Shown here: in pieces, positions 6,714 through 36,639 of the stretch
Layout: each line of letters opens with the position of its first letter
Position numbering within the stretch: position 1 is the first letter of the stretch
Assembly: GCF_001194135.2 (NCBI RefSeq)
Contig: NC_068993.1
Location: forward strand, 29,316,989 to 29,360,455
Origin: Octopus bimaculoides
Taxonomy: Eukaryota
Length of the DNA stretch: 43,467 nucleotides
Direction of reading: 5' to 3'
The notes under the pieces: model-generated
The model's input: only the letters and a program-made list of their open reading frames with translations
What the model was told of the DNA's origin: nothing
Database searches by the model: none
Translations under genes and position numbers: made by a program

Positions 6714-6805
6714 CTTTCATTCATGATTTTATAAATAATTCTTTCATTCATGATTTTATAAATAATTCTTTCATTCATGATTTTATAAATAATTCTTTCA
6801 TTCAT
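6714..6805. repeat. 27-bp minisatellite, about 3.4 copies (CTTTCATTCATGATTTTATAAATAATT)
   Basis: Copies start at 6714, 6741 and 6768, with a partial copy at 6795. This explains the SFIHDFINN repeat in the ORF track. Confidence 0.95.
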
Positions 6806-8364: not shown

Positions 8365-8406
<42 letters not shown>

Positions 8407-8665: not shown

Positions 8666-8689
8666 TATATAATATCAAGAGCATAGCTG

Positions 8690-9625
8690 CTAGAATAAGA
8701 ATAGGCTTGGCAAAGTTCATAGAGCTCCTACCTCTGTTGGTAACAAAGGGCCTTTCTCTCAGAGTGAAAGGCAGATTCTATGATGTCTGTGTGTGAACAA
8801 CCATGCTACATGGCCAGTGAAGTATGTAACTGCTGAGGACATGCATAGGTTTGAAAGAAATGAAGCTAGTATGTTTCACTGGATGTGCAATGTCAGTGTG
8901 CATGTACAACAGAGTGTAAACATCTTGAGAAAAAAGCTGGGCATAAGAGGCATCAAATCTGGTGTGCAAGAGAGATGACTACATTGGTACAGTCATGTGA
9001 CGCTTATGGATGTGGACAGCTGTGTGAAGATGTGCCAATCTCTACCAGTGGACGGAAGTTGTAGAAGAGGTAGACCCAGGAAGATATGGAACAAGGTGGT
9101 GAAGCATGATCTTTGAATGATGGGCCTCACAGAGGCAATGACATGTGACTAAGTTTTTTGGTGATATGCTGTGCTTGAGAAGACCTATCAAACCAAGTGA
9201 AATCATAGTGGTGACTGTTGTCAGTCTCATGTAACTGGCATGTAAAAAGCAGCTTTCAAGCATTGGGCCTCACGGAGGCAATGTGGCCAATGCCAATGTC
9301 ACATAACTAGCACCCATGCTGGTGGCACATAAAAAGCACCTTTCAAGCATTGGGCCTCACAGAAGCAATGACAAATGACCAAGACCTTTGGTAATATGCT
9401 GAGCTTGAAAAGAAAACTTATCAAGCTAAGTGAAATCATAGTTGTGGTAGATACTGGTGTCATGCATCTGGTACCCATACTGGTGGCACATATAAGCACT
9501 CATTACACTCTTAGAGTGGTTGGGTGGTAGGAAGGGCATCCATCTGTAGAAACCATGCCAAATCAAACTGGAGTCTAGCCCTAGTCAATGTATGGACAAT
9601 GGACATTAAATGATGATGATGACAA
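8690..9625 (+). mobile_element. RTE LINE 3' fragment with duplicated 3' UTR blocks
   Basis: RIRIGLAKFIELLPLLVTKG, EDMHRFERNEASMFHWMCNV, RGRPRKIW. (GAT)n tail near 9610-9625. Confidence 0.85.
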
Positions 9626-11399: not shown

Positions 11400-13868
11400 A
11401 CGTATTCTGCGGGACAACCTGCTGAGAGCCACCGAAGAGATCTGTGGCTGGTGTAAAGTCCCCTCTCAACCCAAAGTAACGTGGTGGTGGAACAAGGAGG
11501 TAGACAGGGCTATTAGACAAAAGAAACAGGCTTGGAAGAACGGTGGTAGCAGGGAATTGTATCAGACTGCCAGAAGGGAAGCTAGGCGACAGGTTTATTT
11601 AGCCAGGTGGGAAGCAGATAAGAAAAAATTTGCCAATGTTCTGCGCCATGAAGACCAAAGACTTGAAGTATTTCGTGTTGCAAGACAGTGTGTGAGAGAG
11701 AATCGTGATGTTGTAGGAGAGAAATGTGTTTGCATGGATGATGGTACGCCTGCACTAAACAAGGCTGCAAAGAAAGAGGTTTGGAGACGCCACTACGAAA
11801 GATTGCTCAATAAAGAGAATGAATGGGAGAAAGAGAGTCTGCCGAATGTCAACCCAACAGAGGGACCAGCTATCCGAGTTGACAGTACCATGGTAGATAA
11901 AGCAATTAAGAGTTTGAAGACAGGGAAAGCCCCCGGCTCATCAGGAATCACTGCAGAGATGCTCAAAATATCTGGCAGTGTCGGCTATAGCCTAGTCACC
12001 TGTATTGCTAACCAGATGATACACGAAGGAGTCATACCCAATGACTGGTGTAGTAGAACCATAGCCAACTGCTACAAAGGTAAAGATGATGCTTTAGATA
12101 CAAATAATTACAGAGGTATCAAGCTGTTAGATCAGGTAATGAAAGTCACAGAGAGGGTCATAGCCCAACAAATTAAGGAGAGAGTCAGTTTAGATGAGAT
12201 GCAGTTTGGGTTCGTGCCAGGGAAAAGCACCACTGATGCTATATTTCTGGTAAGACAGCTGCAGGAGAAATACCTAGCCAAGGATAAACCTCTGTACCTG
12301 GCTTTCGTTGAAATGGAGAAAGCCTTTGACAGGATCCCCCTAACCCTTATCTGGTGGTCAATGAGGAAACTCGGGATAGAAGAATGGTTAGTGAGAGCTG
12401 TCAGTAAGGTGAGGGTTGGCAATGAGTACAGTGATGAATTCCGGGTAGAGAAGTTTCAGGTGTGGAAGCAAGGATTAGAATTGAAGGGCCTTAGAGNNNN
12501 NNNNNNNNNNNNNNNNNNNNNNNNNNNNNNNNNNNNNNNNNNNNNNNNNNNNNNNNNNNNNNNNNNNNNNNNNNNNNNNNNNNNNNNNNNNNNNNNNNNN
12601 NNNNNNNNNNNNNNNNNNNNNNNNNNNNNNNNNNNNNNNNNNNNNNNNNNNNNNNNNNNNNNNNNNNNNNNNNNNNNNNNNNNNNNNNNNNNNNNNNNNN
12701 NNNNNNNNNNNNNNNNNNNNNGAAAACAACTTCTGTCTCATTCCAGGGAGAAAAACTAGACGTAGTTGATAGCTTCCGCTATCCTGGTGACCAAGCTAGT
12801 AGTGGGGGTGGGTGCGCTGAATGTGTAGCTACTAGAATAAGAATAGCCTGGGCAAAGTTCAGAGAGCTCTTACCTCTGCTGGCGACAAAGGGCCTCTCAC
12901 TCAGAGTAAAAGGCAGACTGTATGACGCATGTGTACGAACAGCCATGCTACATGGCAGTGAAACATGGGCTGTGACTGCTGAGGACATGCGTAAGCTCAC
13001 AAGGAATGAAGGCAGTATGCTCTGATGGATGAGTAATGTCAGTGTGCATACCCGACAGAGTGTAAGTGTCTTGAGAGAAAAGTTAGACCTAAGAAGCATC
13101 AGTTGTCGCGTGCAAGAGAGAGGATTGCGCTGGTATGGACATGTGGCAAAAAATGGATGAGGATAGCTGCGTGAAAAAGTGCCACACCCTAGCGGTTGAG
13201 GGAACCCGTGGAAGAGGCAGGCCTAGGAAGACCTGGGATGAGGTGGTGAAGCACGACCTCCGAACATTAGGCTTCACCGAGACAATGACTTGTGGCTATG
13301 ACCTTTGGAAATATGCTGTGCGTGAGAAGACCCGGCAAGCCAAGGGAGACCAAAATCCAAGGCCTCTGCCAGGGATGTAGTCAGCCCACTTACACATAAC
13401 ATTCCTTCATTGGACACTAAAATCCGCTTGCGAAAACCTGTTGAGGCAAGTGATATCGAAATCGAACTAAATTTGTAGGAACACTAAACTTGGCTTGTGA
13501 AGACCTGTTGGGGCAAGCAAAAGCGAAATCGTGATGGCACCTGTACCAGTGGAGCACTAAGAGTACCGTCCGAGCGAGATTGTTGCCAGTGCCGATGGAC
13601 TGGCTCCTGTGCAAGTGGTACGTAAAATACACCATTTTGAGCGTGGCTGTCGCCAGTACCACTTGACTGGCCTTTCGTGCTGGTGGCACATAAAACACCC
13701 ACTACACTCTCGGAGTGGTTGGCGTTAGGAAGGGTATCCAGCTGTAGAAATTCTGCCAAATCAGATTGGAGCCTGGTGTCGCCTCCTGGTCCACCAATCC
13801 TCAGTCAAATCGTCCAACCCATGCTAGCATGGAAAACGGACGTTAAACGACAATGATGATGATGATGA
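11400..13868 (+). mobile_element. 5'-truncated RTE LINE with internal RT deletion
   Basis: ORF 11557 has NYRGIKLLDQVMKV, QFGFVPGKSTTDAIFLVRQLQEKY and AFVEMEKAFDR. 3' part AMLHGSETW...RLRWYGHV..RGRGRPRKTW. (GAT)n tail at 13852-13868. Confidence 0.95.
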
Positions 13869-14229: not shown

Positions 14230-15360
14230 AAAACCATTATACCATATACGTCATACCAGTCCTTTACTGTTCAATAAAACTAGTTCTATATAGCATTGTC
14301 TGTACCCTCTTCTTCCATGAATTCAATCATAGAAACATAATAATAGTAATAATCAATAAACCCAGTCCCATATTATCCACTGCTTATCAACAATTCTAGT
14401 GCTGTAAACCATGCTGTCAGCCCATGTTTGTTCAGTAAATCACACATAACACATTTTCTGTCTACTGTTGTTTAATAATCCCAGTCTTTCAATAGACTAG
14501 TGCTATGTACAAACACACTCTATGTTAAGTGTTCAATACACTCCATCTTATGTTTATTATTTGTCCACTGTTGTTAAGTAAGCTCAGCTGTACTGAACAA
14601 CAGTGGACATGCATTATGGTAGAGAGGACTGGGTTTACTGGATAACGGTGGAGAAACTGTGTGATACATAAGTACATAGAATTAGATTTACCAAATCTTA
14701 GGAGGGACTGAGTGTTTTTAACAATGATTGGTACATGAGGATAGTTTTACTGAACAACAGTGAACAGACAGTGTGGTATGAGGGATTAAGTTGACCTAGT
14801 CTGATGCATCACAGTTTCTGTTCATTGTTGTTCACCATTGTTCCAGAAACCCAATCTAGTGCACTAAAATGTCTATCTACAACTGTTTACCAAGCTATTT
14901 CTTATGTACCACGCAGTATGCCTACTTTTGTTAAACTAATACATTCAGTGTACTACACTCTCTATCCACTGCTGTTCAACAAATCCAGTCTTATGTACCA
15001 CACTGTTTGTCTACTGGTGTTTAGCAAATTAAGTCTCATGCACCATATTGTCTGTCCACTGTTGTTAATAAACCCAGTCTTATATACCACATTGTGTCTC
15101 CACTGCTGTTCGACAGACACAATCCTATGTAATAATGTCTGTCCACTGTCATTCAATAAACCCAACCCTATACACAGTTGTTGAATAGACCCAGGACCTA
15201 TGTACTGCTCTGTCTGTCTACTGTTGTTTAATTAACCCATTCTTATGTACCTGTCCATCTACCATTGTTTAACAAAAACAGTTTTAGGTACTAAATAATA
15301 GTACTAATTTTCAATAAACCTAATCCTATGTACCACAATGTCTGTCTACATTGTTCAACA
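14230..15360. repeat. Degenerate ~44-45 bp minisatellite array, part 2, with an inverted block at about 14590-14790
   Basis: Same consensus as 10420-11040, clearest at 14960-15290. Reverse-complement units such as TGAACAACAGTGGACA (14594) and TGAACAACAGTGAACAGACA (14751). Confidence 0.85.
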
Positions 15361-16416: not shown

Positions 16417-16454
<38 letters not shown>

Positions 16455-17728
16455 NNNNNNNNNNNNNNNNNNNNNNNNNNNNNNNNNNNNNNNNNNNNNN
16501 NNNNNNNNNNNNNNNNNNNNNNNNNNNNNNNNNNNNNNNNNNNNNNNNNNNNNNNNNNNNNNNNNNNNNNNNNNNNNNNNNNNNNNNNNNNNNNNNNNNN
16601 NNNNNNNNNNNNNNNNNNNNNNNNNNNNNNNNNNNNNNNNNNNNNNNNNNNNNNNNNNNNNNNNNNNNNNNNNNNNNNNNNNNNNNNNNNNNNNNNNNNN
16701 NNNNNNNNNNNNNNNNNNNNNNNNNNNNNNNNNNNNNNNNNNNNNNNNNNNNNNNNNNNNNNNNNNNNNNNNNNNNNNNNNNNNNNNNNNNNNNNNNNNN
16801 NNNNNNNNNNNNNNNNNNNNNNNNNNNNNNNNNNNNNNNNNNNNNNNNNNNNNNNNNNNNNNNNNNNNNNNNNNNNNNNNNNNNNNNNNNNNNNNNNNNN
16901 NNNNNNNNNNNNNNNNNNNNNNNNNNNNNNNNNNNNNNNNNNNNNNNNNNNNNNNNNNNNNNNNNNNNNNNNNNNNTACTAAAAGGCAGTGCTCCAGCAT
17001 GGCCGCAGTCAAATGACTAAAACAAGTAAAAGAGTATATATATATATATAGTAAAAAACGATTCTGTTGGAGATTTTCCCCATGTGAAGAGTTGTGAAAA
17101 AATATAATAAATGAAGGAAAATGCATACAATTTATATATTTTAAAGGATATATAGTAATACCTCTATATAGAAGTTAATTTTTCCTGGAGACTGCTCATA
17201 AAGCAGAGCAATAATTTCCTATAGTAGCAATGTTATATATCGTAATTCATTCCCTGAAAAATATTTTACCTATAAAATTTATAATACTCATAAATAAATG
17301 GCAATAAAACAACAGCAGAGTGTAAAGAATATGTAAAATAAAGAGAATGTCAAGATCATTTATAATAAAAAATATTATTATAATCATTTTCTGCATCACT
17401 TTCACTCGCACTTGTCCCCTGCACACCATCACTTGTAGACTCGATTGCTGATTCACAGGCACTTGTAGATTTCTTTTTAAAAATAAGTCTAGAGTTGTTT
17501 GCTTAGAAGAAGCTTTTTTTCACTCTATAAATTTCTCAGTAACATGCAGAAGCATTTGTTATGGTTGTAGAAGCTTTTGCACTTCATTCAAAATTTAGAT
17601 CTTGTTCTTGAAAAATTTATTACAAAATCACTGAGTAGTATAAATCCAAATATTCAGTTTACAATCAAGTACAGCAAAGAACATGAGTTATAGTCATGAG
17701 ATAAAGTATGTACAGTGTTGGTTATGTG

Positions 17729-18621
17729 TTAGATTCATATTCAGGTTTGGTTTGTATTTTTCAATAAATTTTTTTTTTTTATTTAATCATTCTTGTATAG
17801 AAATTGTTTCCTTGCACTTGTAGATGGGGAAAACCATTAAGTTTGGTTGGAGATTCCCTGCACATTTCGCTATGTGTTCATTCAATGGTATCTGTCTATA
17901 CCTTGGGAAATGGATCTGTTCCTTATGCAGTGAAGTTCTCCATCTAAGTGAAATCCTTCTTTGGCTATATAGTTGTGTCCACAACCTGAACAAGTTATCA
18001 CATAAATTAAATTTTTGAATGCACAAGTGAAATTGGTCTTCATTGTGAATCTCTGTCCTTGTTTGAACTGGAATTCCAAACCTTCCAGTAGGTTGGGGTA
18101 TGTACCACAATTTGGGTGCCCACATTTTTTAACAATTGGTTTCATTGTTGATGGGTATAGCTTCACATTTGTCAGTCTTTTTAATGATTTGGGCTGTTTT
18201 TTACATTTGGCGAATTTGTGTGTTTGTAGAATGTGGTTCATTTTTGGGTCTCTATTGAGCATTGTCTTTCCATTATTTGTTTTTGGTAGGTGGTTTAGCA
18301 TACTTAGATCACCTCTAATGAAATTTTTTTATATATTTCAAAAGGGATTTCAGTAGGATGCCTAGAAAGTTGCTTAGGCAGTGGGTTTTACATGCTAGGC
18401 CAACTATAATGGGGCTTATCTTCAAATCTTCCAGTGCCTGGATATTGATGTATATACCTGGTGATTGTTTGCAGGCTTCATTAATTATCTGGCTCTTGTG
18501 TATCTTAGATAGGTCATAGAAAAGACTAGGTTTACATTTAAAGCTCATGGTATAGTCCATTTCTTTTTCTGTCAGAACTTTTCCATGTAGATGAATTAGG
18601 GATGCAAAATTTTTCTTTCTT

Positions 18622-18664
<43 letters not shown>

Positions 18665-19110
18665 TGTATAATTTTTAAACTTTTCAGTGTCCAGAAGAAC
18701 TACAGCACTTCTGCTGTGTCTGGCAGAACAACAGCACTTCCTTTGTCAGCTTCTTTGGTTAATTGTTAGTTCTTTATCATTTTGCAGATCAATTAAATTT
18801 TTCCATTTGATATTGTTAAAGTTGATTCTTCGCTTGTATAAAGTATTCGGGAAATTCAGGATTTGGTCACAAAAGTCATCTAGTGTTTAATTCCTACCTT
18901 TAAGTAGAAGATAATTGCTTTTCTTTTTGAGCAGTGATTCATCCTCGTTGTTGTAATCAATTAATGCTTCTGTAAGTCATAGTTTTCAGCAAAATTCTGT
19001 AATATTGTTTTTAATTTCATTCTGATTAGATCTGTTTGGGGCTGGGATAAATTTTAATTCTTTTGCAAGTATATTGATTTTTGTTGCTGAGAAAGTTTTC
19101 TTTGATAAAC
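17729..19110 (-). mobile_element. Penelope-like element remnant (N-terminal region, RT C-terminus, GIY-YIG endonuclease); RT core deleted
   Basis: GIY-YIG-type FTCAFKNLIYVITCSGCGHNYI, ending FIEKYKPNLNMNL*. N-terminal LAKELKFIPAP..LQNDKELTI at 18700-19110. ISPIIVGLACKTHCLSNFLGILLK marks RT domain 0/1. Confidence 0.85.
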
Positions 19111-19112
19111 TT

Positions 19113-21650
19113 ATCATCATCATCATCATCATCATCATTTACCATCCATTCTCCATGCTAGTAAGGGTTGGATGGTTCGACAGGAGCTAGATAGCTACCC
19201 AGGATCTACTTTGTCTGTTTTGGCATATTTTTCTTTGGTTGAATGCCTTTTCTAAATCCATCTACTTTACAGAGTGCACTGGGTGCTTTTAATGTGGCAC
19301 CAGCATGGGTGCTTTTATGTTGCACTAGCATGGGCAAATTTTACATGGCATCAGTACAGGTGCTTTTATGTGGCACCAATATAGGTGCTTTTACGTGACA
19401 TCAGCACCCATGAGCCCACAAAAGCTAGGGTCTCTCAGCTGAGGGAAGGACATAGAGGACATGCCTGTATATGTGAATGGCTATGATTTTACTAAGTTGG
19501 GTGTGTTTTCTCAAGCACAGCAAACCACCAGAAGTCACAGTCCCTTGTGTCCCTTAAAGGTCCTTTCTCACTACTTTGTCCTACATCTTCCTGGGTATAC
19601 TGCTTCCATATGTTCCCTCCACAGTTAGGGATCAGCACTTATTGGTGCAGCTGTCCTCATTCATATGCATCACATGACCATACCAACAGTTTTTTCTATT
19701 GGACACTACACTTGAAGCCTCATATACCCAATTTTTCTCTCAAATCACTTACACTCTTTCATCCATGCACATTGACATTGCTCATCCAGTGGAGAATGCT
19801 GGCTTCATTTCTTTCACACTTTCATATGTTCTCAGTAGCCACAGCTCGTTTCACTGTCTTGTAACATAGCTTTTCATATACAGGCATCATACAATCTGCA
19901 TTTCACTCTGAGAGAGAGGCCCTTTGTTGCTAACAAAGGGAGTAGCTCTCTGAACTTTTCCCAGCCCATTCTTATTCTATCAACAATGCTTTCAGAACAA
20001 CTTCCTCCACTGGTGACTTGGTTGCCCAAATAACAGAAACTCTCTACTACTTCTAAGAATCTCGCCAGACATTTGAGGGAGTCTTTTTTCTGTACATTCC
20101 TAGTATTTGGGGTACCTGCACATCTGTCACAGACAAAGACTACTTTCCCTGTTAATCTTGCTGTAATACTGCTGCACATCTTATGTGTCCATACCTGGAA
20201 CTGGGTACGCCTTATGGAGTTTCTACCAACACCTTTTCTATATATTGAGCAGGGTCATCACCCTGAAGGGACTTGTGATTTGTCTGTTTTCCTACTTCCT
20301 AGGACTTTGGTCTTTGCTAAATTAACACTAAGGCTCTTTGATTCCAGACCTTCCTTCTACACCTGAAATTTTTTCTCTAGTACTGATAGTGATTCAGCAA
20401 TAAGAAAAAGGTCAGCAAAAGAGAGAAGCTCCCAAGGGCAGCCAGTCTTAAATTCCTCTGTTATGGCCTGAAGAAATATGATAAACAAAAGGGGCTGAGA
20501 ACCAAACCTTGGTGAACTCTTACCTGTGCACTAAATTCTTTGCTATATTCATTGACAACATTCATCTTACTGACAGCATCTCTGTACATGGCTTGTATGG
20601 CTCTCCCCAACTACTCATCGATCTTTAGCTTCCACATTGCTCACCAGATAAGGGAGCAGAAGACCCTGTCAAAGGCTTTCTCCCTGTCAACAAAAGCCAA
20701 GTACAGAGGTTTATTTTTGATTAAATACTTCTCTTATAGTTGCCTCACTAGAAAGATAGCTTCAGTAGTGCCCTCTTCCTGGCACAAAACCAAACTGCAT
20801 CTTATCTAGGCAACTCTTTCTGCAACTTTCATCACCTGGTCCAGCAATTTGGTGTAACATTTTTTGTCTCAGGCATCACCTTTAGCTCTGTAACAGTTGA
20901 CCATAATGCTGCTACACCAGTCATTATAGGATCCTGTGAATAGTCAGGGATTTAGAGACTTCCTAACTGAAGTATTTAACGAGAAGGAGATACAGACATG
21001 TAACATAGAGGACAACTGGAAGTTCCTGTGGGACACTTTGCTGAGTGCCACCTCATGGACAACCTGATTAACTATACAGATGACTAAGCCATAACCCACT
21101 CTGCTAGATATTCTTAGCATCTCAGCAGTGATGTGCTTATCTACTAAACTGCTGTCAACATAGATAGCCAGTCCCTTGATTGGGACCACGTTAGGCAAGC
21201 TCTCTTTCTTCCATGCATTCTTTACATTTAGCAACCTTTCATAGTGATACTTCAAAGCCTTCTCCTTTGCAGAATCATTAACTGCACGTAAGCCATCATC
21301 CATGCAAATGCACTTCTCTCCTACAACATCATGGTTTTCTCTGACACACTATCTCACAATCCAAAACACCTCAAGCTTCTGTCCTCATGCCACAGAATAT
21401 TGGCAAACTTCTTCCTTTTTGTTTCTCTCCTGCCTAAATATATCTGTTTTCTAGCTTCTGCTACCAACATTCTTCCAGGCCTGTTTCTTTGCTCTAATGA
21501 CTCTGTCTACTATACTGTTCCACTACCATCCTACCCTAGGCCTAGTTGGGACTTTGCACCAACTGCAAGTTTTGTCTGTGGCACTTGGCAAGGTGTCACA
21601 CAAGAACTTCCAGCTGTCCTCTATGGCATATATTGCAGTAATGTGGATGA
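19113..21650 (-). mobile_element. Decayed RTE LINE with an inverted internal segment (about 20945-21050)
   Basis: (ATC)n end at 19113-19137. Fragments ESFCYLG..RIRMGWEKFRELLPLL, CSICRKGVGRNSI and LAFVDREKAFDRV. Confidence 0.9.
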
Positions 21651-21699
21651 GGGACTATTGAAGAAGAAGGGGAGATGGGAGGGCTGAAGGAGAGGAAGA

Positions 21700-22615
21700 A
21701 GAAAGAAAGAAGCTATGGTCTCACTTGTCCTGCCAGGTCTTCTCAAGCACAGCATGTCTCCAAAGGTCTCAGTCACTATTCATTGCCTCAGTAAGGCCCA
21801 ATGTTCGAAGGTCATGCTTCACCACCTCATCCCAGATCTTCCTGGGTCTACCTCTTCCACAGGTTCCCTCAACTGCTAGGATGTGACACTTTTTCATACA
21901 GCTGTCCTCATGGACAGCTGTGTGAAAAACATATGACCATACCAGCATATGATGCTTCTTAAATCCAACTTTTCTCTCAGGGCGCTTACACTCTTTTGTG
22001 TATGCACACTGACATTACACACCCATGTTTCACTGCCATGTAGCATAGCCGTTCGTACATATGCATCATACAGTCTGCCTTTTACTCTGAGTGAGAGGCC
22101 CTTGTCACCAGCAGAGGTAAGAGCTCTCTGAACTTTGCCCAGGTTATTCTTATTCTAGCAGCTACACTTTCAGCGCACCCTCCCCCACTACTAACTTGGT
22201 CACCCAGATTGCGGAAGCTATCAACTACCTCTAGTCTTTCTCCCTGGAATGTGGCAGAAGTTGTTTTCTGCACATTTACAGTGTTTATAGCTCCTGAACA
22301 TCTGCTACATACAAAAACTAACTTCTTAGTTAACCTTCCTTTGATATTGCTGCACCTCTTATGTGTCCATTGCTTGCACTGGGTGCATCTTATAGAGTTC
22401 CTACCCACACCTATTCTACAGATCGAGCAGGGCCATCTACCTGAAGGGATTTGTGGTTTGTCTGCCTTCCTACTTATTAAGACTTCGATTTTTGCTAGGT
22501 TGACTCTAAGGCCCTTCGATTCTAGTCCTTGCTTCCACACCTGAAACTTTTCCTCCAGTTCTGATAGTGACTCAGCAATTAGAGCAAGGTCATCAGCATA
22601 GTGGAGCTCCCAGGT
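21700..22615 (-). mobile_element. RTE LINE RT C-terminal fragment
   Basis: WELHYADDLALIAES catalytic motif. CSICRIGVGRNSIRCTQCKQWTHKRCS. RIRITWAKFRELLPLL. Confidence 0.93.
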
Positions 22616-22791
22616 ATATATATATATAATTAAAGGTACTAACAAGCAGTACTAACATGCTAAATATAGCAGTCAAAATGACGAATCCACAAATTTTCAC
22701 TAAAACACAAAGGTGAAAGTGGGCAAATGAATAAAAATCCTAAAACCCGCACCAATGATGAAAATATTCGAAAATTGAAAAAGCCAGACAT

Positions 22792-22837
22792 ACTTGTATC
22801 ACAGTGATTTCGTACCCTTAGTTCATCTTCAGCAAGT
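22792..22837 (-). ncRNA. Type I hammerhead ribozyme motif
   Basis: Minus strand: ACUUG CUGAAGA U GAAC uaagg GUAC GAAA UCAC U GUGA UA^ CAAGU. Stem I is 5 bp, the CUGANGA/GAAA core is intact, stem II has one A.A mismatch, stem III is palindromic, and the cleavage triplet is AUA. Confidence 0.8.
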
Positions 22838-23350
22838 CTTACTGACCCCAGGGTTATAGACATTATTTATCTCACTAATGTGTACAATGACCATTTTTAA
22901 TGCCGCAGCAAACTTAAAAAGGTGATCGAAGTGAATAAAAATTATTTACATATATATGAGGATATTATTGTTTATAATAATATCAGTGGCTTAGCATGTG
23001 TAGAAAACCCATAACGATAAAAAAATTAATGGAGATTTAGGGCTTTTATTTATTTGCCCGCTTCTACCTTTGTGTTTAAGTGAAGATTTATGATTTGGTC
23101 ATTTTGATTGCTATATTTATCATACCAGTACTGCTTGTTAGTACCCTTAATTATTTATTAATTGATAATTTTTTACCATTATGGGTGTTTTACTCATGCT
23201 AAGCCACTGATATTATTATAATCAATAATATCCTCATATACATTTAAATAATTTTTATTCACTTCCATCACCTTTTTTTAAATTTGCTGTGGCATTCAGA
23301 ACGGTCATATAGGTGAGATGAATAATCTCTATAACCCTGGGGTCAGTAAA

Positions 23351-23408
23351 ACTCACTGAAGATGAACTAAGGGTTTTTCTCAAAGTTCGAAATCAAAGCG
23401 ATACGAGT
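23351..23408 (+). ncRNA. Type I hammerhead ribozyme motif (sense to the host pre-mRNA)
   Basis: ACUCA CUGAAGA U GAACU (15-nt loop) AGUUC GAAA UC aaagc GA UA^ CGAGU. Core intact. The closing pair of stem I is an A.C mismatch. Confidence 0.75.
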
Positions 23409-23664
23409 ATGTCTGGCTTTTTCAATTTTTGATTTTTTTCATCATTGGTACGGGGTTTTAAAATCTTTATTCATTTGCCTGCTTTCACCCTTGTGTTTAA
23501 GTGAAAATTTGTGGTTTGGTCATTTTGACTGCTATGTTAGCACCCTTATTTATCAATTGAGAATTTTTTTACCGTTATAGGTTATTTACACATGCTAAGC
23601 CACTGATATTATTATAAAAAATAATTTTTTCTTATATATCTTTATACTCTTTAACAACTCTGTT

Positions 23665-24000
23665 GGTCATGAATGACCATGGGTGCACCTAAGAGGTTCT
23701 CTTCCAGGGTACATGTCTGGGCAGAAAGTCGCCTCACCGGCGAATGCACAATCTAGGGTTGTTTTCATGGAAGACCAGCAGTCACCCATGCATACCAGCC
23801 TCCCTTCTCCGTGCCACTGATGTTATCCAAGGGAAAGGCAAAGGTTGATACAACTTGGCACCAGTGATGTCATAACTCATTTGAAATGTGAAATGAAGTG
23901 TCTTGCTCAAGAACACAACATGCAGCCTGGTCCAGGAATTGAACTCACAACCACACGATCGTAAGCTCGATGCTCTAACCATTGAGCCATGCACCTTCAC
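23665..24000 (-). mobile_element. SINE of a second family (tRNA-like head plus CTTGAGCAAGACACTT core) with adjacent interspersed repeat
   Basis: Minus strand has GGCTCAATGGTTAGAGCATCGAGC (A box), GAGTTCAATTCC (B box) and TGTTCTTGAGCAAGACACTTCATTTCAC. Confidence 0.8.
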
Positions 24001-24496
24001 ATCTTCATATATATATATATANNNNNNNNNNNNNNNNNNNNNNNNNNNNNNNNNNNNNNNNNNNNNNNNNNNNNNNNNNNNNNNNNNNNNNNNNNNNNNN
24101 NNNNNNNNNNNNNNNNNNNNNNNNNNNNNNNNNNNNNNNNNNNNNNNNNNNNNNNNNNNNNNNNNNNNNNNNNNNNNNNNNNNNNNNNNNNNNNNNNNNN
24201 NNNNNNNNNNNNNNNNNNNNNNNNNNNNNNNNNNNNNNNNNNNNNNNNNNNNNNNNNNNNNNNNNNNNNNNNNNNNNNNNNNNNNNNNNNNNNNNNNNNN
24301 NNNNNNNNNNNNNNNNNNNNNNNNNNNNNNNNNNNNNNAAGAAAAAAAAAAATTAGGGATAGCAATCAAAAAGGATTAAAATTGTTTGGGGTATACACAA
24401 AAAAAAATTGAAATAATACTGTCATATATTAACACATTTATTTACAAGTAAATAACTCTCTGTTTTAAATTTTTTGTGTTTTACTTTCCCCAGTTT

Positions 24497-27352
24497 ATAG
24501 TATCATGCTCAAGGTGGCTTCGTCATTCACACATGCCATCCTTGCTACATTCACCCATCTTTTTTTGAAATATTCGCTAGACAAAACTTTCACCTTCTCT
24601 ACTTTCACCTTCCTTTTCAAGTGATACTTGAAAAAGTTGATGAGAGATTGACCAGAGAGGAAAGTGTTTGTCTCTAACCCTTTCAGATGCGTCCACTAGA
24701 TACATTCTTTCGCCATAGCCACAAGTATGATGAAAACAGCTCTTCCTTCCCGTTTGAAGGAAGGAGGCATGACAATATTGACGATAGACTCAGCTGATAA
24801 ACCAACTTGTCCAACACATGACAGCAGTCGTTCGACATAAGCCCACAAGTCGGAAATGGTTGGACACTGCACGAGTGCATGCAGAATGGTTTCATCGCTC
24901 TGACCACATCTCGGGTAGGTCGGCCCATGTTTCTCAAGCCATGTCTGTAGAGCTTTTCCTGAACGGGTAGCGCTTCTTGGTAGCACTGCCAAGCCAGGGA
25001 TTCCTGGAAGTTATCCATAGGTCCTGGCCCGAAAGTCGTCTTGAACAGGCGGGTCAGGTATTCTCCATCGACACCCAGGTTCACCCTATGATCATCATCA
25101 TACCCCCCACTCCACTGATCCACTATAGAATGCTTTGTTTGTGATGCAGTTGCTCAAGGTCGACTCAGAACAGCAGAGTTACTCAAGAGAAATGCGACAT
25201 TTGTGGTGCCATTCGCCCTTCCTCAGCCTCTTCTAGATTCACGACTGCAGCTCTGTCATGGTGACGAGCTGCAGGAAAGCGTGTCGCACAAACGGCGACC
25301 TCACCTGTTCACTGTTGTCTACGTAGAGCTAGAGATGTCGCAGTCCCAGTGCATGTCTGCACATCATCAACCACGGTATGCTTAGCCCTCCTTTCAGCAG
25401 GTGTTGGCAACAAACGGACCACCTGACCATCAGAACACTTCCTTTCCAGAAGCGGAAGCATTCCAGTTTGGCACAACGGTCAGGCGGTAGTTGATGACGG
25501 ATGCAATTTACGCGTTCGCCATCTCCGCCATTTCAGGGACAGCTTCTTCTTGGCCAATTGCTGAGAGAGAGTGGCCACCCTACTCATTATCTCATCCCAG
25601 TTCTTCTCCGTTTGGAGAACCAGATCCCAAGCAACTTGACCGGCCCGTCCGTCCAGCATCCCATTACTGAGGCGCTGCCACACAGCATGGGCTTGCTTTT
25701 CCAGGTGCCAAGCCGCAAGCCCACTGACTTTTCCCAGTTGATTTTCACTCCCGTCACCGCTTCATAATCTTTCAGTGTCTCGCCAACCAGCTCGATGTGC
25801 TGGTAGCTAGACACTATGACGGTGACGTTGCAGTACACTGCTGCCAAGACATCTCCAAACAACTCTGTCATACAATTGTAAAGCTCTTAGTGCAGACCAT
25901 CCAAACCCAGCGATTTGTCCCTAACTTCTGCCGCCGCAATAGCACCTTCGCAGNNNNNNNNNNNNNNNNNNNNNNNNNNNNNNNNNNNNNNNNNNNNNNN
26001 NNNNNNNNNNNNNNNNNNNNNNNNNNNNNNNNNNNNNNNNNNNNNNNNNNNNNNNNNNNNNNNNNNNNNNNNNNNNNNNNNNNNNNNNNNNNNNNNNNNN
26101 NNNNNNNNNNNNNNNNNNNNNNNNNNNNNNNNNNNNNNNNNNNNNNNNNNNNNNNNNNNNNNNNNNNNNNNNNNNNNNNNNNNNNNNNNNNNNNNNNNNN
26201 NNNNNNNNNNNNNNNNNNNNNNNNNNNNNNNNNNNNNNNNNNNNNNNNNNNNNNNNNNNNNNNNNNNNNNNNNNNNNCTGCAACTCCACTACCTGGGCCT
26301 CTCGCATGACTCCAACACCTTCGTTCCTTAAGAGCATGCATCCGAGCCCTGACAACACACCCTTCATGTTTGGCGTTGAAGTGTTAGTCGAGGGCCAACC
26401 TCTCCACCAAAATGTCGGATGCGATGCCGCTTCTTATCACTGCTTCTAACTTCTTAACTAGCTCACCCTCTACTCTGTTTCTATCTATGGCTAGTGCTTT
26501 GCTATATCTAATTGCTTCCGCTTTTACTGCTCTTTTGAGGGCAAACCACCATTTGTTGTTGATGATGGCTACCTTCAAAGCCCTCTTTACTAGCGTGCTA
26601 ATTCAGTCTCTGAAAACTTGTCTCGACGGGAAAGACACATTCAGTTTCCAGTAACTGGGGCCCTGCCTATGTGCCTTATCTAAGTCTAGCATACACGTCA
26701 CAAGTTTGTGATCCATGTAGCTGACAATGTGGAATTGTGGACATCCTAAGCTAGATATGGTCTCGGCGACCCAATGTGGTTGCTCCATGTCCACGTTGGT
26801 GCATTTGGGTAGTTGAGTCAGTACCTGTCAGACAGCTGAAAGTGTCTGAGCAGGTCTCTGAGGCATTTGCATCCCCATCTATTCCTGTCTCTTCCCACGT
26901 AGTCTAGATGCGTGTCCAAGGTAGCATTCCAATCTCCCATTAAAAGTAAAGGATGAAACGTTCCTAGGAATACTTCTAGACATCGAAAGAAATCCGGCCA
27001 ACTTGTTAAAGGCGGTACATAGACTGCTAGAATTCGAAAAGTGCACCCATCACTGCTGTCGACATCCAGGATAACCAGTCTACCCTCCGGGTCTACGAAT
27101 ATCGTCTTTACTTCGTGATCCAGACACTTGCGAAAAAGTACCACCGTGCCACTACCGCTCATACTCGGCAGACAGAGAGAAAAATAAATGTTATACTGTC
27201 CGCCAAACATGGACTTTAGGGCCCATGGCTCATGGAGTCTGGTCTCACTTATGGCTATGATTTTCAAATCATGTGACTTTATATCATTTAAGAGGTACCC
27301 TTGTTTCCAAGGGGCCCCAAGCCATGCGCATTCACACAACCAATCTTGACCA
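24497..27352 (-). pseudogene. Tx1 ORF2 (APE endonuclease-RT-CCHC), frameshifted and spanning a gap
   Basis: ORF track fragments 26818-27339, 26603-26794, 26384-26578, 25587-25871, 25480-25683 and 24696-24992 are collinear. Confidence 0.85.
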
Positions 27353-32508: not shown

Positions 32509-33751
32509 TTAGGTTGTCCCACATGAAATGTCATATTTTAAATGGGTTTCTTATGAGCCGTCTATAAATGGATTTTTAATGAGTTTCTTTGTACATGCTT
32601 GTGTTTACTCTTAACTCTTTTTCTTTGTAGCCAATACTATTATTCAAAATTGCTATCCACAGCTCTTATGACAATGTTGACAACTGAACAATACTGAGTG
32701 ATTTTCTTGTACGAATGCAAGTTGAGTCACTCTGCCACAGAAGCTCTATGAAACATCAAGCGGGCTTTTGGTAACGACATTAGAACTGTTCAGAGATAGT
32801 TTCAAAGATTTTGTTCAGGAAGTGAAAGCTTTAAAAATTAACTAAGAGGGAGAGCAAAATCAGTTATTTGGCATAAGGAATTAAATGCTTTGGTTAGATA
32901 AAATCCAAGAACAATGGTCCGAAAATATTGGATCAGAGCTCCAGACATCTCCCACAACTGCTTCTTGACACTTGAAGAAAACTGGAAAGGTCAAAAAGAT
33001 GGATAGGTTTATTCCCCATCAACTTAATGAGATTCAAAGAAATAGACACCTTACAGTGTATTCCATGTTGATTTCTCAGTTGGAAAGAAAACCATTTTTG
33101 TATCAACTCATTATATGTGATGAGAAATGGTTACTCTTTGATAACAGCAGGAGGACAGGACAGTGGTTAGATGCAGGAGAGTCACCAAAACACTACACAA
33201 AACCACCATTGCACCCTAAAAAGTTGGACACTGTATGATGGTCAACAAATTCATTTTTGCAACAAGGAAAAACTGTAACAGCAACATCCTATTGTCAGGA
33301 AATTAATTGTATGCATGAAAAATTAAAAAAAGAAGCAACCCAGATTAGTGAATAGAGATGACCCAATTTTCCTTCATGATAATGCATGGCCTCACTCTTC
33401 TCAAGCTTACAGTCCACAAGTTGCAAAGCTTGAATTATGAAATTTTGGCACATCCTCCTTATTCTCCTGATATCTCTCCTACTGATTATCATATATTTAA
33501 ATACTTCGAGCTTGCTATATGCAATAAAGCATTCTTAAATAAAGAAGAGGTAATTGAAGCATTCAAACAGTTTATCAGTGTAAAAGATGACAAATTCTTT
33601 GAAGATGGAATATATGCCTTAGAAGAACATTGGCTGAGGGTCATACATGAACAAGGATTGTATTTTGATTAAATAAATAAATATTCTAAAACTTAAAAAA
33701 CAATTTTAATGTTTCCTTTTTCTAATGTGACATTTCATGTGAGACAACCTA

Positions 33752-33752: not shown

Positions 33753-33784
<32 letters not shown>

Positions 33785-33994
33785 TGAGAAAGTTGGTATG
33801 TGAAAGCACATGATTGGATGTATAAAAGATAAAAAAGAGTGAGAAAACTACAGAAGGCTTGTGTTATATGGTTAAAATATATATTTAAATCGTTATGTTA
33901 GAAAAATGTTATAAAATTTTGAATATAGAAACATTAAAGTTGTTGTATATTGTCAACTTAATGTGACAATCCCAATAAGGGAATATACTACTGC

Positions 33995-35470
33995 TGTTTA
34001 ACCCTAGGAAGCTGGACCACTTCCTGTCGGCCTTGACACAATTACTGTGTCCTTATGTTTGCGAGGGGGAGACAAACTCCTCCACCCAGCCTAGCCAGCA
34101 TTCAGGGACATGTTTCTGAGTCTTTGCTCGTCATCAGCCTGAAGTAGCATGACCAGCTGGTTGAAATAACCGGTTTCGTATTTTCTTTTCAAATTTCTCT
34201 ATCTGTATCGTAACATGTCTTCGCTATGGTGTAAAATATGGAGTTCTAGATAGGGGAAGGTAATCAGGGATTTTTTCTGGTATAAGGGAAATAATAAAAA
34301 ATGTTGGGGATAAAAGGGTTTGATTAATTAACATCATTTGGTTTAGGAGGAATAGAATGTTACAAGTGGTTAGGTTTTGCTTTATATTTTTTTCAATGAG
34401 GTGAGTTTCCTTATTTAAAAATGTTAGAAATGGTTAAGTTTTGGCTTATATTCTTCAATGAAGAAGGTTTCCTCATTTTTCAATATGTTCACTAAAGGGT
34501 ATCATTCTGTATTCTGGGAATGCAATCTGCTGTCGATGCAGAGTGCATCTGCATCTGAGCGATAATCTATGTAGTTTTGGTGGCAGCCCGAGCATCTTAT
34601 GACATAAATCAGGTTTTCTGAGGCACAAGCAAAGTCAGATTTGATTTTGAATTTTTGTCTCTCTTTGAAAAGGAATNNNNNNNNNNNNNNNNNNNNNNNN
34701 NNNNNNNNNNNNNNNNNNNNNNNNNNNNNNNNNNNNNNNNNNNNNNNNNNNNNNNNNNNNNNNNNNNNNNNNNNNNNNNNNNNNNNNNNNNNNNNNNNNN
34801 NNNNNNNNNNNNNNNNNNNNNNNNNNNNNNNNNNNNNNNNNNNNNNNNNNNNNNNNNNNNNNNNNNNNNNNNNNNNNNNNNNNNNNNNNNNNNNNNNNNN
34901 NNNNNNNNNNNNNNNNNNNNNNNNNNNNNNNNNNNNNNNNNNNNNNNNNNNNNNNNNNNNGATCTTTTTTAGTGATTTTGGTTGTTTGTAGCTTTTAATG
35001 ATTTTATGTGTGTGTAAAATTTCCTTTAATTTGGGGTCCTTATGTAGCATGGTAAATTTTGGGTGATGATGGTGAAGGCTTCTTTGTTTCTGGGGTTGTA
35101 TGTGGATATGTAAGGCAGTATTTTCGGGGAAGGTGTGTTGAACTTTTCTTATGTTTTCTATGTCGATTTGTAATGCACGTCTGATTCCATCCTCTATGAG
35201 TTGAACTGGGTAGTGTCTGTCAATTAGGGTATTTTTGAGTTCTTGCAGTCTAAAGTCCACAGGATTATCGCTCAGATGCAGATGCACTCTGCATCGACAG
35301 CAGATTGCATTCCTGGAATACAGAATGATACCCTTTAGTGAATATATTGAGAAATGCGCAAAACAAATGCTACCACAATTTATAATCTTTCCATTCTATC
35401 AATATGCCATTGGAACACCAACACAAATTAGACATTAAATGAGGAAACCTTCTTCATTGAAGATATATTA
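33995..35470 (-). mobile_element. Penelope-like element 3' remnant with pLTR-like region and inverted 5' duplication
   Basis: LQELKNTLIDRHYPVQLI (RT thumb), IIKSYKQPKSLKKI, FACASENLIYVIRCSGCHQNYI (GIY-YIG), ending EEYKPKLN. 35263-35467 is an inverted copy of 34448-34567. Confidence 0.85.
34101..34143 (-). ncRNA. Minimal type I hammerhead ribozyme motif downstream of a Penelope GIY-YIG ORF
   Basis: Minus strand: UUCAGG CUGAUGA C GAG caaaga CUC A GAAA CAUG UC^ CCUGAA. Perfect 6-bp stem I, intact core, palindromic ACAUGU stem III and GUC cleavage triplet. C.A mismatch at the base of stem II. Confidence 0.85.
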
Positions 35471-36150: not shown

Positions 36151-36639
36151 TAATAACAGTGTAGCAACACGGTGGTGCATCAGCATGGTCGCAGCTCTAA
36201 GCTGAAACTTAAAAAAAAAATTAAAAAAACGTACTAATCTATGATAGAAAATTCATCAAAAAAGTACTCCATGTGGTGAGAGATAAATATTGTTATTTGA
36301 AGGTCACAATACATTTGTTAAAGCACTACTAATAGTTTCATATGTTGAAAGAACTCAAACATATTCTTCAGGCGCAAACCACATAGCATTACAACTTAAA
36401 AAATTGAATAAAGAGAAGAAACTTGATGAAGCTGAGAAAAAGCAGACAGTAAGCAACAGAAAATGAAACTAAAGTGTCAAAAGGTAAAAAACGCTATCCT
36501 GCTTAGGCCTTAAATGATAAGGCAGGAAAGATATCAAGTCAGTCAGGAATAGGTGAAATTTTCCAATTGTTCAGAATATATTTATACATATGCATGCAAC
36601 CACTGAAAATTTCTGACCTGGAGTTCGATGCAATCTTTC

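What the first reader, a model, noticed from the sequence alone, without database searches (positions are those of the whole stretch)
22632..23630. Hammerhead-bearing ~400-bp tandem repeat in inverted arrangement: candidate non-LTR retrozyme / circRNA family
Seen: a non-coding ~400-420 bp monomer occurs once in reverse and about 1.4 times in forward tandem. The reverse unit and the full forward unit each hold a type I hammerhead with an intact CUGAAGA..GAAA core and the same extra U after the core. Stem I differs between copies (ACUUG/CAAGU versus ACUCA/CGAGU), consistent with CpG decay of an ancestral ACUCG/CGAGU. One copy has a palindromic stem III (AUCACUGUGAU), typical of dimer-cleaving minimal hammerheads. 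Established: metazoan non-LTR retrozymes are 170-400 nt tandem monomers with type I hammerheads that produce circular RNAs and are thought to use Penelope-like machinery; inverted junctions are typical of Penelope insertions. Inference: this is a cephalopod retrozyme-like family. I cannot tell whether it is already catalogued.
Basis: partly seen in the sequence, partly recalled or inferred. Interest (0 to 1): 0.88.

Follow-up and report, generated by a model that had tools for sequence, protein, structure and literature searches.

The report
Decayed hammerhead-bearing Penelope-type repeat insertion
A real but worn-out insertion of a ~400-base non-coding repeat carrying a Penelope-type hammerhead ribozyme, arranged head-to-head plus partial tandem beside a (TA)n microsatellite; it belongs to an already described kind of animal mobile element and cannot itself release an RNA circle.

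Summary
One ~400-nt AT-rich non-coding unit lies on the minus strand (22630-23030). About 1.5 units lie on the plus strand (23031-23655), and they meet head-to-head at about 23026-23045. Copies are 81-88% identical, and the window holds no others.

Each full unit carries a type I hammerhead with a complete catalytic core. My hammerhead descriptor finds such motifs in only 1-2% of simulated 41-kb sequences.

The "extra U", the G10.1-C11.1 pair, the short helix I, the small palindromic helix III and the opposite-strand pairing about 520-600 nt apart are the published hallmarks of Penelope-like-element (PLE) hammerheads. The layout is the published PLE insertion layout: an inverted copy, a partial upstream copy and a full copy, next to (TA)n. 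PLE gene fragments lie elsewhere in the window, one with its own hammerhead.

Caveats:
- No Rfam hammerhead model recognises either motif.
- Each copy is damaged.
- Only one ribozyme lies on each strand, so no monomer can be excised here.
- The predicted unit RNA is not unusually structured.
- Family size, expression and the host taxon could not be tested.

Verdict: a decayed non-autonomous PLE derivative of retrozyme type, a new member of a known kind, of modest interest.

The parts
22615..22628 (.). (TA)7 microsatellite abutting the outer (3') end of the inverted unit. The unit's own ...UUAAUUAU end blends into it, so the boundary is ambiguous over 22622-22629.
   Evidence: Sequence read; end alignment. 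(TA)n is a reported preferred PLE target.
22630..23030 (-). Unit R: one essentially complete ~400-nt unit in reverse orientation. Its 5' end lies at the central junction and its 3' end points outward.
   Evidence: nhmmer 22631-23027, E 4e-136; end alignments.
22783..22848 (-). Hammerhead of R. Core CUGAAGA at 22832-22826, bulged U at 22825, GAAA at 22811-22808. Helix III is the palindromic AUCACUGUGAU (22808-22798). Predicted cleavage lies between 22797 and 22796. Helix II is degenerate (GAAC/GUAC).
   Evidence: found only when one helix II mismatch is allowed; hammerhead fold -1.4 kcal/mol; helix III self-duplex -12.1 kcal/mol; only RAGATH-1-hammerhead, 11 bits.
23026..23045 (.). Head-to-head junction between R and the forward array. 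The exact breakpoint is ambiguous within this low-complexity stretch.
23031..23159 (+). F0: a 5'-truncated upstream copy holding only the 3' third of the unit. This is the position of a pseudo-LTR in a PLE-style partial tandem.
   Evidence: nhmmer model positions 300-418, E 4e-22.
23160..23560 (+). F1: a full forward unit.
   Evidence: E 6e-136.
23341..23418 (+). Hammerhead of F1. Distal helix I at 23341-23346 / 23413-23418; proximal helix I at 23351-23355 / 23404-23408 (A.C at pair 2.1-1.1). Core at 23356-23362, bulged U at 23363. Helix II at 23364-23368 / 23384-23388 with an inner GGG/CUC extension. GAAA at 23389-23392; helix III at 23392-23402. Predicted cleavage after A23403.
   Evidence: The MFE fold reproduces helices I and II. 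Pair counts.
23561..23655 (+). F2: a trailing partial copy (the 5' quarter of the unit). Its similarity fades after about 23625 and it directly abuts a tRNA-like SINE-type sequence on the minus strand.
   Evidence: E 8e-15; weak tRNA match on the flank.

Best explanation
This is an old, mutated insertion of a ~400-nt, AT-rich, non-coding mobile element that carries a Penelope-type type I hammerhead ribozyme. In today's terms it is a non-autonomous derivative of Penelope-like elements, a "non-LTR retrozyme"-type repeat.

Shown:
- The layout is an inverted full unit, a 5'-truncated unit, a full unit and a trailing partial unit.
- The sense (ribozyme) strands of both arms run 5' ends inward and 3' ends outward, and the left end merges into (TA)n.
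- The hammerhead core is complete in both units and carries the PLE signature features.
- PLE RT/GIY-YIG gene fragments lie in the same window.

Inferred mechanism for the family:
1. A multimeric transcript of tandem units is cut by the hammerheads. Given the short palindromic helix III, two adjacent ribozymes probably pair as a dimer.
2. The unit-length RNA is probably circularised by a host tRNA ligase.
3. A PLE reverse transcriptase/GIY-YIG endonuclease supplied in trans copies it into a nicked (TA)n target. Priming uses AU-rich microhomology at both DNA ends, which yields the head-to-head plus partial-tandem product.

At this locus the element is dead. There is only one ribozyme per strand, each with a structural defect, and the copies differ by about 14-19%.
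For: - Architecture.
- Motif rarity: the descriptor finds 3 sites in the window against 0.013-0.02 expected.
- Hammerhead register: 92.5% of cells paired against 14-36% in slid controls, with one both-sided change in helix I.
- F1's minimum-energy fold contains helices I and II.
- PLE-hammerhead signatures from Cervera & de la Pena 2014 are seen here:
  - G10.1-C11.1;
  - a 4-5 bp proximal helix I;
  - a small palindromic helix III (R; self-duplex -12.1 kcal/mol);
  - two motifs on opposite strands 100-700 bp apart (cores 524 nt apart).
- PLE insertion structure and (TA)n bias: Craig et al. 2021.
- Retrozyme features from Cervera & de la Pena 2020: a 150-450 bp head-to-tail unit, GC below 45% (30-31% here), no ORF, and coexistence with PLEs.
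- Retrozymes are related to pLTRs (Li et al. 2026).
- PLEs in the window: ORF fragments at 17882-18301 and 34502-35287 have 1554 relatives. The full-length relatives (700-817 aa) carry RVT_1 plus a C-terminal GIY-YIG domain.
- A hammerhead at 34084-34157 lies downstream of one fragment (Hammerhead_HH9, 27 bits, E 2.8e-5 in a local search).
Against: - No Rfam hammerhead model reaches even E<=10 on F1. R gets only RAGATH-1-hammerhead at 11 bits. The same procedure does pick up the PLE-side hammerhead.
- R's helix II is broken and F1's pair 1.1-2.1 is A.C.
- With two copies, covariation carries no weight (263 of 500 shuffles do as well), and conservation of the core is not beyond what 86% identity gives.
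- Only one ribozyme lies on each strand, so no monomer can be released here.
- Circular folds of the virtual monomers are ordinary (z -0.42 and -0.45).
- No target-site duplication or tail could be defined.
- R spans almost exactly one unit, with both ends in the AT-rich linker and not at the cleavage site. The inserted template was therefore not a linear ribozyme-cut monomer.
- There is no sequence similarity to the PLE fragments in the window.
- No other copy was found anywhere that could be searched.
Confidence: 0.68

Rival explanations
1. The units are leftover pseudo-LTRs or untranslated ends of an autonomous Penelope-like element that lost its ORF locally through truncation or internal deletion. 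On this view there is no independently propagating short retrozyme family.
For: - Most PLE hammerheads in animal genomes are single or opposite-strand motifs ascribed to truncated PLEs.
- The hammerhead here is of the PLE kind (bulged nucleotide, palindromic helix III), not the canonical retrozyme kind with loop-loop contacts.
- The layout is the PLE layout.
- An internally deleted PLE is visible elsewhere in the window at 17882-19138.
Against: - The unit is continuous across two head-to-tail joins (F0/F1 and F1/F2) with a ~400-nt period and no coding remnant.
- R and F1 independently show the same complete 400-nt unit.
- There is no similarity to either PLE fragment in the window.
- The distinction may be semantic, because retrozymes are now argued to be pLTR derivatives.
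Confidence: 0.17
2. This is a local DNA-level tandem duplication and inversion (replication slippage, fold-back or recombination at AT-rich palindromic linkers) of a sequence that happens to hold a genuine hammerhead relic. No retrotransposition of a 400-nt unit is involved.
For: - No target-site duplication, poly(A) or defined tail was found.
- All copies are about equally diverged, as expected after one local event.
- The breakpoints lie in AT-rich near-palindromic stretches (ATTAAT, TTAA) next to a microsatellite.
Against: - The specific combination of an inverted copy, a 5'-truncated upstream copy and a full copy, with ribozyme-sense 3' ends outward next to (TA)n, is the recurrent PLE product.
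- PLE insertions often lack discernible target-site duplications in microsatellites.
Confidence: 0.09
3. The hammerhead-like motif is a chance match inside an unrelated AT-rich interspersed repeat. It appears in both copies only because they are copies.
For: - No Rfam hammerhead hit.
- The two copies are not independent observations.
- Each copy has a helix defect.
- There is no statistical covariation.
Against: - The descriptor false-positive rate is 0.013-0.02 per 41 kb, roughly 2e-4 for a given 400-nt unit by my extrapolation.
- The motif carries several independent PLE-specific traits: a bulge between positions 9 and 10.1, G10.1-C11.1, a palindromic helix III and the opposite-strand arrangement.
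- An unrequested 5-6 bp distal helix I sits beyond an internal loop.
Confidence: 0.05

Closest known systems
Metazoan non-LTR retrozymes (Cervera & de la Pena 2020, NAR; e.g. the 350-390 bp Mytilus galloprovincialis repeats)
   Same: - A short (150-450 bp), low-GC, non-coding head-to-tail unit carrying a type I hammerhead.
- A mollusc example of nearly the same unit length exists.
- PLEs are present in the same genome.
- Mussel hammerheads likewise lack most canonical loop-loop nucleotides.
   Different: - Only 1.5 forward units with a single ribozyme per strand.
- An inverted copy is attached.
- The ribozyme has the PLE-type bulged nucleotide and a palindromic helix III.
- The predicted unit RNA is not highly self-paired.
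- Copy number and circular RNA are unknown.
Hammerheads in the pseudo-LTRs of Penelope-like elements (Cervera & de la Pena 2014, MBE; Craig et al. 2021, MBE)
   Same: [quoted passage not shown]
- Paired motifs 100-700 bp apart on opposite strands.
- The inverted + partial-tandem insertion structure next to (TA)n.
   Different: - No RT/GIY-YIG ORF lies between or beside the repeats.
- The repeat unit is only ~400 nt.
- Helix III is a real 3-4 bp stem rather than absent or 1 bp.
- Helix I has a distal extension.
- There is no similarity to the PLE fragments in the window.
Classical hammerhead 'satellites' (newt satellite 2, ~330 bp; Schistosoma Sm-alpha), now regarded as retrozymes
   Same: A few-hundred-bp tandem unit with a type I hammerhead. 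A weak helix III implies cleavage as a dimer in multimeric transcripts.
   Different: Those are families of thousands to 10^5 copies with canonical loop 1-loop 2 contacts that Rfam recognises. Here there is a single decayed locus with no Rfam match.

Membership tests
Hammerhead ribozyme, type I | Conserved core C3-U4-G5-A6-N7-G8-A9 ... G12-A13-A14, A15.1-U16.1, and H17 (not G) at the cleavage site | tested here: met
   Both copies read CUGAAGA ... GAAA ... U-A with A at position 17. One extra U lies between A9 and G10.1.
Hammerhead ribozyme, type I | Three helices around the core, with helices II and III capped and helix I open | tested here: met
   - F1: helix I of 4 bp plus a distal 6 bp, helix II of 5 bp (+3), helix III of 3 bp. 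The MFE fold contains helices I and II.
- R: helices I and III are intact but helix II has 3 of 4 pairs, and the hammerhead fold is worth only -1.4 kcal/mol.
- The feature is met for F1 and marginal for R.
Hammerhead ribozyme, type I | Occurrence beyond chance | tested here: met
   The descriptor finds 3 sites in the window against a mean of 0.013-0.02 in 300 simulated sequences.
Hammerhead ribozyme, type I | Match to curated covariance models (Rfam Hammerhead_1, HH9, HH10, II, 3) | tested here: not met
   Nothing at gathering score and nothing at E<=10 for these models. The best is RAGATH-1-hammerhead at 11.1 bits on R.
Hammerhead ribozyme, type I | Compensatory changes in the helices across copies | tested here: inconclusive
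   With two sequences there is one both-sided change (C-G to U-A at pair 2.2-1.2) and three single-copy breaks. 263 of 500 shuffles do as well.
Hammerhead ribozyme, type I | Self-cleavage | not testable with these tools
   This needs in vitro transcription of monomer and dimer constructs.
PLE-type hammerhead (Cervera & de la Pena 2014) | [quoted passage not shown] | tested here: met
   U23363 and U22825, then G-C closing helix II in both copies.
PLE-type hammerhead (Cervera & de la Pena 2014) | Short helix I (4-5 bp) and a small or absent palindromic helix III allowing dimer action | tested here: met
   The proximal helix I is 4-5 bp. R's helix III AUCACUGUGAU is palindromic (self-duplex -12.1 kcal/mol). 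F1's AUCAAAGCGAU is not palindromic (-2.1).
PLE-type hammerhead (Cervera & de la Pena 2014) | Located in the flanking repeats of an element encoding RT plus GIY-YIG endonuclease | tested here: not met
   - No ORF longer than 67 aa lies in or between the units, and that ORF has no homologue.
- PLE ORF fragments exist 4.3 kb and 10.8 kb away but share no sequence with the unit.
Metazoan non-LTR retrozyme (Cervera & de la Pena 2020) | Head-to-tail repeats of 150-450 bp, low GC, no LTR and no ORF | tested here: met
   Period 396-421 nt across two joins; GC 30-31%; no ORF.
Metazoan non-LTR retrozyme (Cervera & de la Pena 2020) | At least two hammerheads in the same strand flanking a monomer, so that a unit RNA can be excised | tested here: not met
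   There is exactly one motif on the plus strand and one on the minus strand. The forward array ends about 250 nt after its only ribozyme.
Metazoan non-LTR retrozyme (Cervera & de la Pena 2020) | Highly self-paired unit RNA | tested here: not met
   Circular MFE is -72.3 and -74.6 kcal/mol, with z -0.42 and -0.45 against dinucleotide shuffles. The copies are decayed, so this is weak evidence.
Metazoan non-LTR retrozyme (Cervera & de la Pena 2020) | Multi-copy family in the genome, expressed as linear and circular RNA | not testable with these tools
   - The source genome is not in any searchable collection.
- Two metagenome scans found nothing.
- Look-ups of window-encoded proteins found nothing on record.
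- There are no other copies in the window.
Metazoan non-LTR retrozyme (Cervera & de la Pena 2020) | Coexistence with autonomous PLEs in the same genome | tested here: met
   - PLE fragments lie at 17882-19138 and 33783-35287, both on the minus strand.
- Their full-length relatives carry RVT_1 plus a C-terminal GIY-YIG domain.
- Both copies seen here are themselves truncated or broken.
PLE insertion architecture (Craig et al. 2021) | An inverted 5'-truncated copy adjacent to a partial upstream copy and a full copy, with a microsatellite target | tested here: met
   R (inverted), F0 (3' third only), F1 (full), with (TA)7 at the left end. The right end abuts a SINE-like sequence, so the target on that side is unclear. 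The 95-nt F2 is longer than the described 30-40 bp tail.

The most novel reading that the evidence does not exclude
The locus is the first sighting of a live retrozyme family in this (possibly cephalopod) genome. In that family a Penelope-type hammerhead (bulged nucleotide 9/10.1, palindromic helix III, dimer-dependent) would process tandem 400-nt units into abundant circular RNAs. That would bridge the minimal PLE ribozymes and the canonical retrozyme ribozymes. The near-exact unit length of the inverted copy, with both ends in the AT-rich linker, would record reverse transcription of a circular or multimeric template primed by (TA)n microhomology.
Probability: 0.2. Interest if true: 0.55.

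Novelty: new member of a known kind. Interest (0 to 1): 0.36.

Why it matters
If a genome-wide search confirms it, this would add a further mollusc lineage to the animals that carry hammerhead-bearing non-autonomous Penelope derivatives. No paper in the searched library reports a cephalopod retrozyme.

The example would also be an intermediate form. The ribozyme has PLE-type core peculiarities but a real helix III and an extended helix I, and it sits in a 400-nt unit arranged exactly like a full PLE insertion. That bears on the current proposal that animal retrozymes are pLTR derivatives mobilised by PLE enzymes.

For genome annotation, the locus shows that Rfam models miss this class of hammerhead, whereas a descriptor search finds it.

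In itself the locus is an inactive relic in a transposon-rich intergenic stretch.

Tried and rejected
- **Rfam, whole window at gathering score:** no hits.
- **Rfam, local E-value mode on both ribozymes:** no Hammerhead_1 or HH9. As a control, the same mode found Hammerhead_HH9 at the PLE-side motif but nothing at the third motif.
- **More copies in the window:** self-BLAST with word size 7 and an nhmmer profile found only the four local segments.
- **More copies elsewhere:**
  - A protein search with the 67-aa ORF spanning R's ribozyme found nothing.
  - Two exact-pattern scans of metagenome contigs (ribozyme plus helix I; the most conserved 23-mer) found nothing.
- **Source organism:**
  - Exact look-up of two window ORFs found nothing on record.
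  - A LINE RT search gave at best 56% identity. The only named hit was Argonauta hians at 54%, so the taxon stays unconfirmed.
- **PLE relatives:** Logan and ENA contigs holding relatives of the PLE fragment contain no hammerhead pattern and no similarity to the unit.
- **Direct domain searches on the PLE fragments:** Pfam and PDB gave nothing. Identity came only through full-length relatives.
- **Rejected readings:**
  - Coding element: no ORF and no homologue.
  - tRNA gene in the right flank: ARAGORN found none, and Rfam tRNA scored only 17 bits.
  - The site at 36336-36371 as a non-ribozyme: my first hand parse put G at position 17, but the descriptor found a valid register with A17.
  - Core conservation as evidence of selection: identical runs of 22-27 nt are expected by my own calculation at 86% identity over 400 nt.
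Full report
**What is in the sequence**

Four tools agree on the same picture: the repeat finder, a self-BLAST, a multiple alignment and an nhmmer profile built from the two full units.

| Segment | Coordinates | Strand | Content |
|---|---|---|---|
| R | 22631-23027 | minus | one full unit |
| F0 | 23031-23149 | plus | 3' third of a unit |
| F1 | 23161-23558 | plus | one full unit |
| F2 | 23561-23655 | plus | 5' quarter of a unit |

- The unit is about 400 nt. The head-to-tail period is 396-421 nt.
- The window holds no other copy, even at E = 10 with the profile.
- The units are 30-31% GC against 37.5% for the window.
- The longest ORF is 67 aa and has no homologue.
- R and F1 are 86% identical over aligned columns, with 29 transitions and 24 transversions. 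CpG is mildly depleted: 5-7 observed against 10 expected.
- All pairwise identities fall between 81% and 88%. That fits one old event followed by independent decay.

**The ribozymes**

Read directly from the sequence:

- F1 reads GGUCAG-UAAA-ACUCA / CUGAAGA / U / GAACU-AA-GGG-UUUUU-CUC-AA-AGUUC / GAAA / UC-AAAGC-GA / U-A | CGAGU-AUGU-CUGGCU.
- R reads the same except for three places:
  - Helix I is ACUUG/CAAGU.
  - Helix II is GAAC-UAAGG-GUAC, which is 12 nt shorter with an A.A mismatch.
  - Helix III is UCAC-UG-UGA.

All invariant hammerhead positions are present in both copies. The nucleotide at the cleavage site is A, and the open helix is helix I, so the topology is type I. Beyond a 4 x 4 internal loop, helix I continues as a 5-6 bp helix that is identical in both copies.

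I wrote a descriptor with these requirements:
- helix I of at least 4 bp;
- CUGANGA followed by 0-1 extra nucleotide;
- helix II of at least 3 bp;
- GAAA;
- A15.1-U16.1 plus at least 2 bp;
- H17.

Results:
- With one helix I mismatch allowed it finds F1.
- With one helix II mismatch also allowed it finds R.
- 300 simulated first-order Markov sequences of window length give 0.013-0.02 hits each.

The pairing scheme is satisfied in 92.5% of cells in register and 14-36% when slid. F1's minimum-energy fold already contains helices I and II.

**Weak points**

- No Rfam hammerhead model recognises either motif, either at gathering score or at E<=10 in local searches. R gets only 11 bits to RAGATH-1-hammerhead. 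The same procedure gives 27 bits (E 2.8e-5) to Hammerhead_HH9 for another motif in the window, so the miss reflects real divergence from the curated families.
- Each copy is damaged.
  - F1 has A.C at pair 1.1-2.1.
  - R's helix II is degenerate, and its hammerhead fold is worth -1.4 kcal/mol against a competing -10.
- Two copies cannot give meaningful covariation.
- There is one both-sided change (C-G to U-A). By my own enumeration, three of the four possible decay outcomes at those two CpGs would keep pairing, so it says little.

**What kind of hammerhead**

The "extra U" is the key. Cervera & de la Pena (2014, PMC4209133) describe the hammerheads of Penelope-like elements (PLEs) as having:
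- a conserved G10.1-C11.1 pair;
- a short helix I of 4-5 bp;
- a small palindromic helix III, or none, so that two ribozymes act as a dimer;
- frequent occurrence as two motifs 100-700 bp apart on opposite strands.

All of these apply here. The bulged U, the G-C pair at the base of helix II and the 4-5 bp proximal helix I are present in both copies. R's AUCACUGUGAU forms a self-duplex of -12.1 kcal/mol. The cores lie 524 nt apart on opposite strands.

**What kind of insertion**

Craig et al. (2021) describe PLE insertions as a full copy preceded by a 5'-truncated copy (the pseudo-LTR). An inverted 5'-truncated copy often abuts the 5' end, there is a short "tail" at one end, and (TA)n is a preferred target.

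The locus reads: inverted R, then F0 (3' part only), then F1 (full), then F2 (a short continuation).

- The ribozyme-sense strands have their 5' ends at the junction (23026-23045) and their 3' ends outward. That is the polarity expected if ribozyme-sense RNA was reverse-transcribed from both ends of a target break.
- R's outer end (...CCUUUAAUUAU) merges into (TA)7 at 22615-22628.
- R spans almost exactly one unit, with both ends in the AT-rich linker between units. The template was therefore not a linear ribozyme-cut monomer. A multimer, a circle or a transcript with linker ends all remain possible.
- On the right, F2 fades out at 23625-23655 against a SINE-like sequence on the minus strand with a weak tRNA-like head (Rfam tRNA 17 bits; ARAGORN none).
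- That is followed by (TA)n and an assembly gap at 24022-24338.
- On the left lies a 5'-truncated LINE fragment (RVT_1 plus PHD).

**PLE enzymes nearby**

- ORF fragments at 17882-18301 and 34502-35287 (minus strand) show a CX4CxxC-type linker and a GIY-YIG start with two internal cysteines.
- Pfam and PDB do not recognise the short fragments directly.
- A profile of the fragments finds 1554 relatives. The full-length relatives (700-817 aa) match in their C-terminal part and carry RVT_1 plus GIY-YIG above Pfam cut-offs. That is the canonical PLE architecture.
- About 345 nt downstream of the second fragment's stop sits a hammerhead with a UAC bulge and a CAAAGA loop (34084-34157). (AT)n follows at 33754-33782.
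- None of this shares sequence with the 400-nt unit.

**Relation to retrozymes**

Metazoan non-LTR retrozymes (Cervera & de la Pena 2020) are 150-450 bp, low-GC, non-coding tandem units with type I hammerheads. They are expressed as circular RNAs, coexist with PLEs, and a mussel family measures 350-390 bp. Li et al. (2026 preprint) argue that they derive from pLTRs.

This locus meets some of those criteria and fails others:
- Met: unit size, base composition, tandem joins, absence of an ORF, and coexistence with PLEs.
- Not met: two ribozymes in one strand. There is only one on each strand.
- Not met: a strongly self-paired unit RNA (z -0.42 and -0.45).
- Untestable here: family size and expression. 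The source genome is not in any collection I could search.

**Taxon**

Cephalopod origin is unconfirmed. A LINE RT from the window has its only named relative in the octopod Argonauta hians, at 54% identity. No paper in the library reports a cephalopod retrozyme or hammerhead family.

**Verdict**

The feature is best described as a decayed, PLE-style insertion of a short non-autonomous element with a Penelope-type hammerhead.

The mechanism is inferred from the literature and from the anatomy, not shown here. It runs: dimer-assisted self-cleavage of multimeric transcripts, ligase-mediated circularisation, then PLE RT/EN-mediated integration at (TA)n.

The locus is a new member of a known kind and of modest interest. 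Its value would rise if a genome-wide search shows a large, intact, expressed family.

Noticed in passing
window 33754-35468 (minus strand element): A truncated Penelope-like element.
- ORF fragments at 34502-35287, split by an N gap, hold the linker and the start of the GIY-YIG domain.
- A type I hammerhead lies at 34084-34157, with a UAC bulge and a CAAAGA loop (Rfam Hammerhead_HH9, 27 bits, E 2.8e-5 locally, below the gathering score of 52).
- (AT)n follows at 33754-33782.
- A short inverted duplicate of 34448-34520 lies at 35310-35468, again the PLE-style inverted arrangement.
   Followed up: partly
window 36323-36371 (minus strand): A third hammerhead-like motif passes the strict descriptor (0 hits in 300 simulations): GCGC/CUGAAGA/AUAUGUU...AACAUAU/GAAA/CU-AUU-AG/U-A|GUGC. 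It has a 7-bp helix II, a 4-bp helix I and A-U at 10.1-11.1. It has no Rfam hit, no repeat partner in the window, and its context is unidentified.
   Followed up: partly
window 17882-19138 (minus strand): A second PLE copy that looks internally deleted. N-terminal-type pieces (KELKFIP; LSKIHK...SPIIVG) at 18315-19138 run almost directly into the post-RT linker (CGHPNCGTY) and the GIY-YIG start at 17882-18301. Most of the RT is missing. An N gap at 16455-16976 removes its downstream region.
   Followed up: partly
window 653-2300, 8684-9208, 11413-13352, 19848-20434, 20944-22612: At least five fragments of one LINE family (RT followed by a PHD finger; Pfam RVT_1 and PHD on the copy at 22082-22645), 66-92% identical to one another. 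The copy next to the finding is cut at the YADD motif exactly where the (TA)n begins.
   Followed up: partly
window 23656-24000 (minus strand): A SINE-like sequence with a weak tRNA-like head at 23927-23996 (Rfam tRNA 17 bits, below threshold; ARAGORN negative). It lies between the forward array and a (TA)n run and is single-copy in the window.
   Followed up: partly
window 7610-8364, 16455-16976, 24022-24338: Three of the eight assembly gaps start or end directly at (TA)n runs (8365-8403, 16424-16454, 24007-21). This suggests the assembly breaks at TA microsatellites, which are also where the PLE-type insertions sit.
   Followed up: no
window 24600-27340 (minus strand): A different LINE, with an Exo_endo_phos (APE) endonuclease domain at 26818-27339 and RT-like ORF pieces at 25587-25871 and 24683-25123. 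It is interrupted by an N gap.
   Followed up: no
window 33358-33672 (plus strand): A 104-aa ORF ending ...HPPYSPDISPTDYHIF..., which resembles the C-terminal part of a mariner/Tc1-type transposase. This is recognised from memory only and was not tested.
   Followed up: no
window 43315-43467; 6709-6814; 14900-15110: Three minisatellites found by Tandem Repeats Finder:
- a GC-rich 63-nt unit x2.4 that runs off the window end;
- a 27-nt unit x3.9 (97% matches);
- a 44-45-nt unit x4.7.
   Followed up: no
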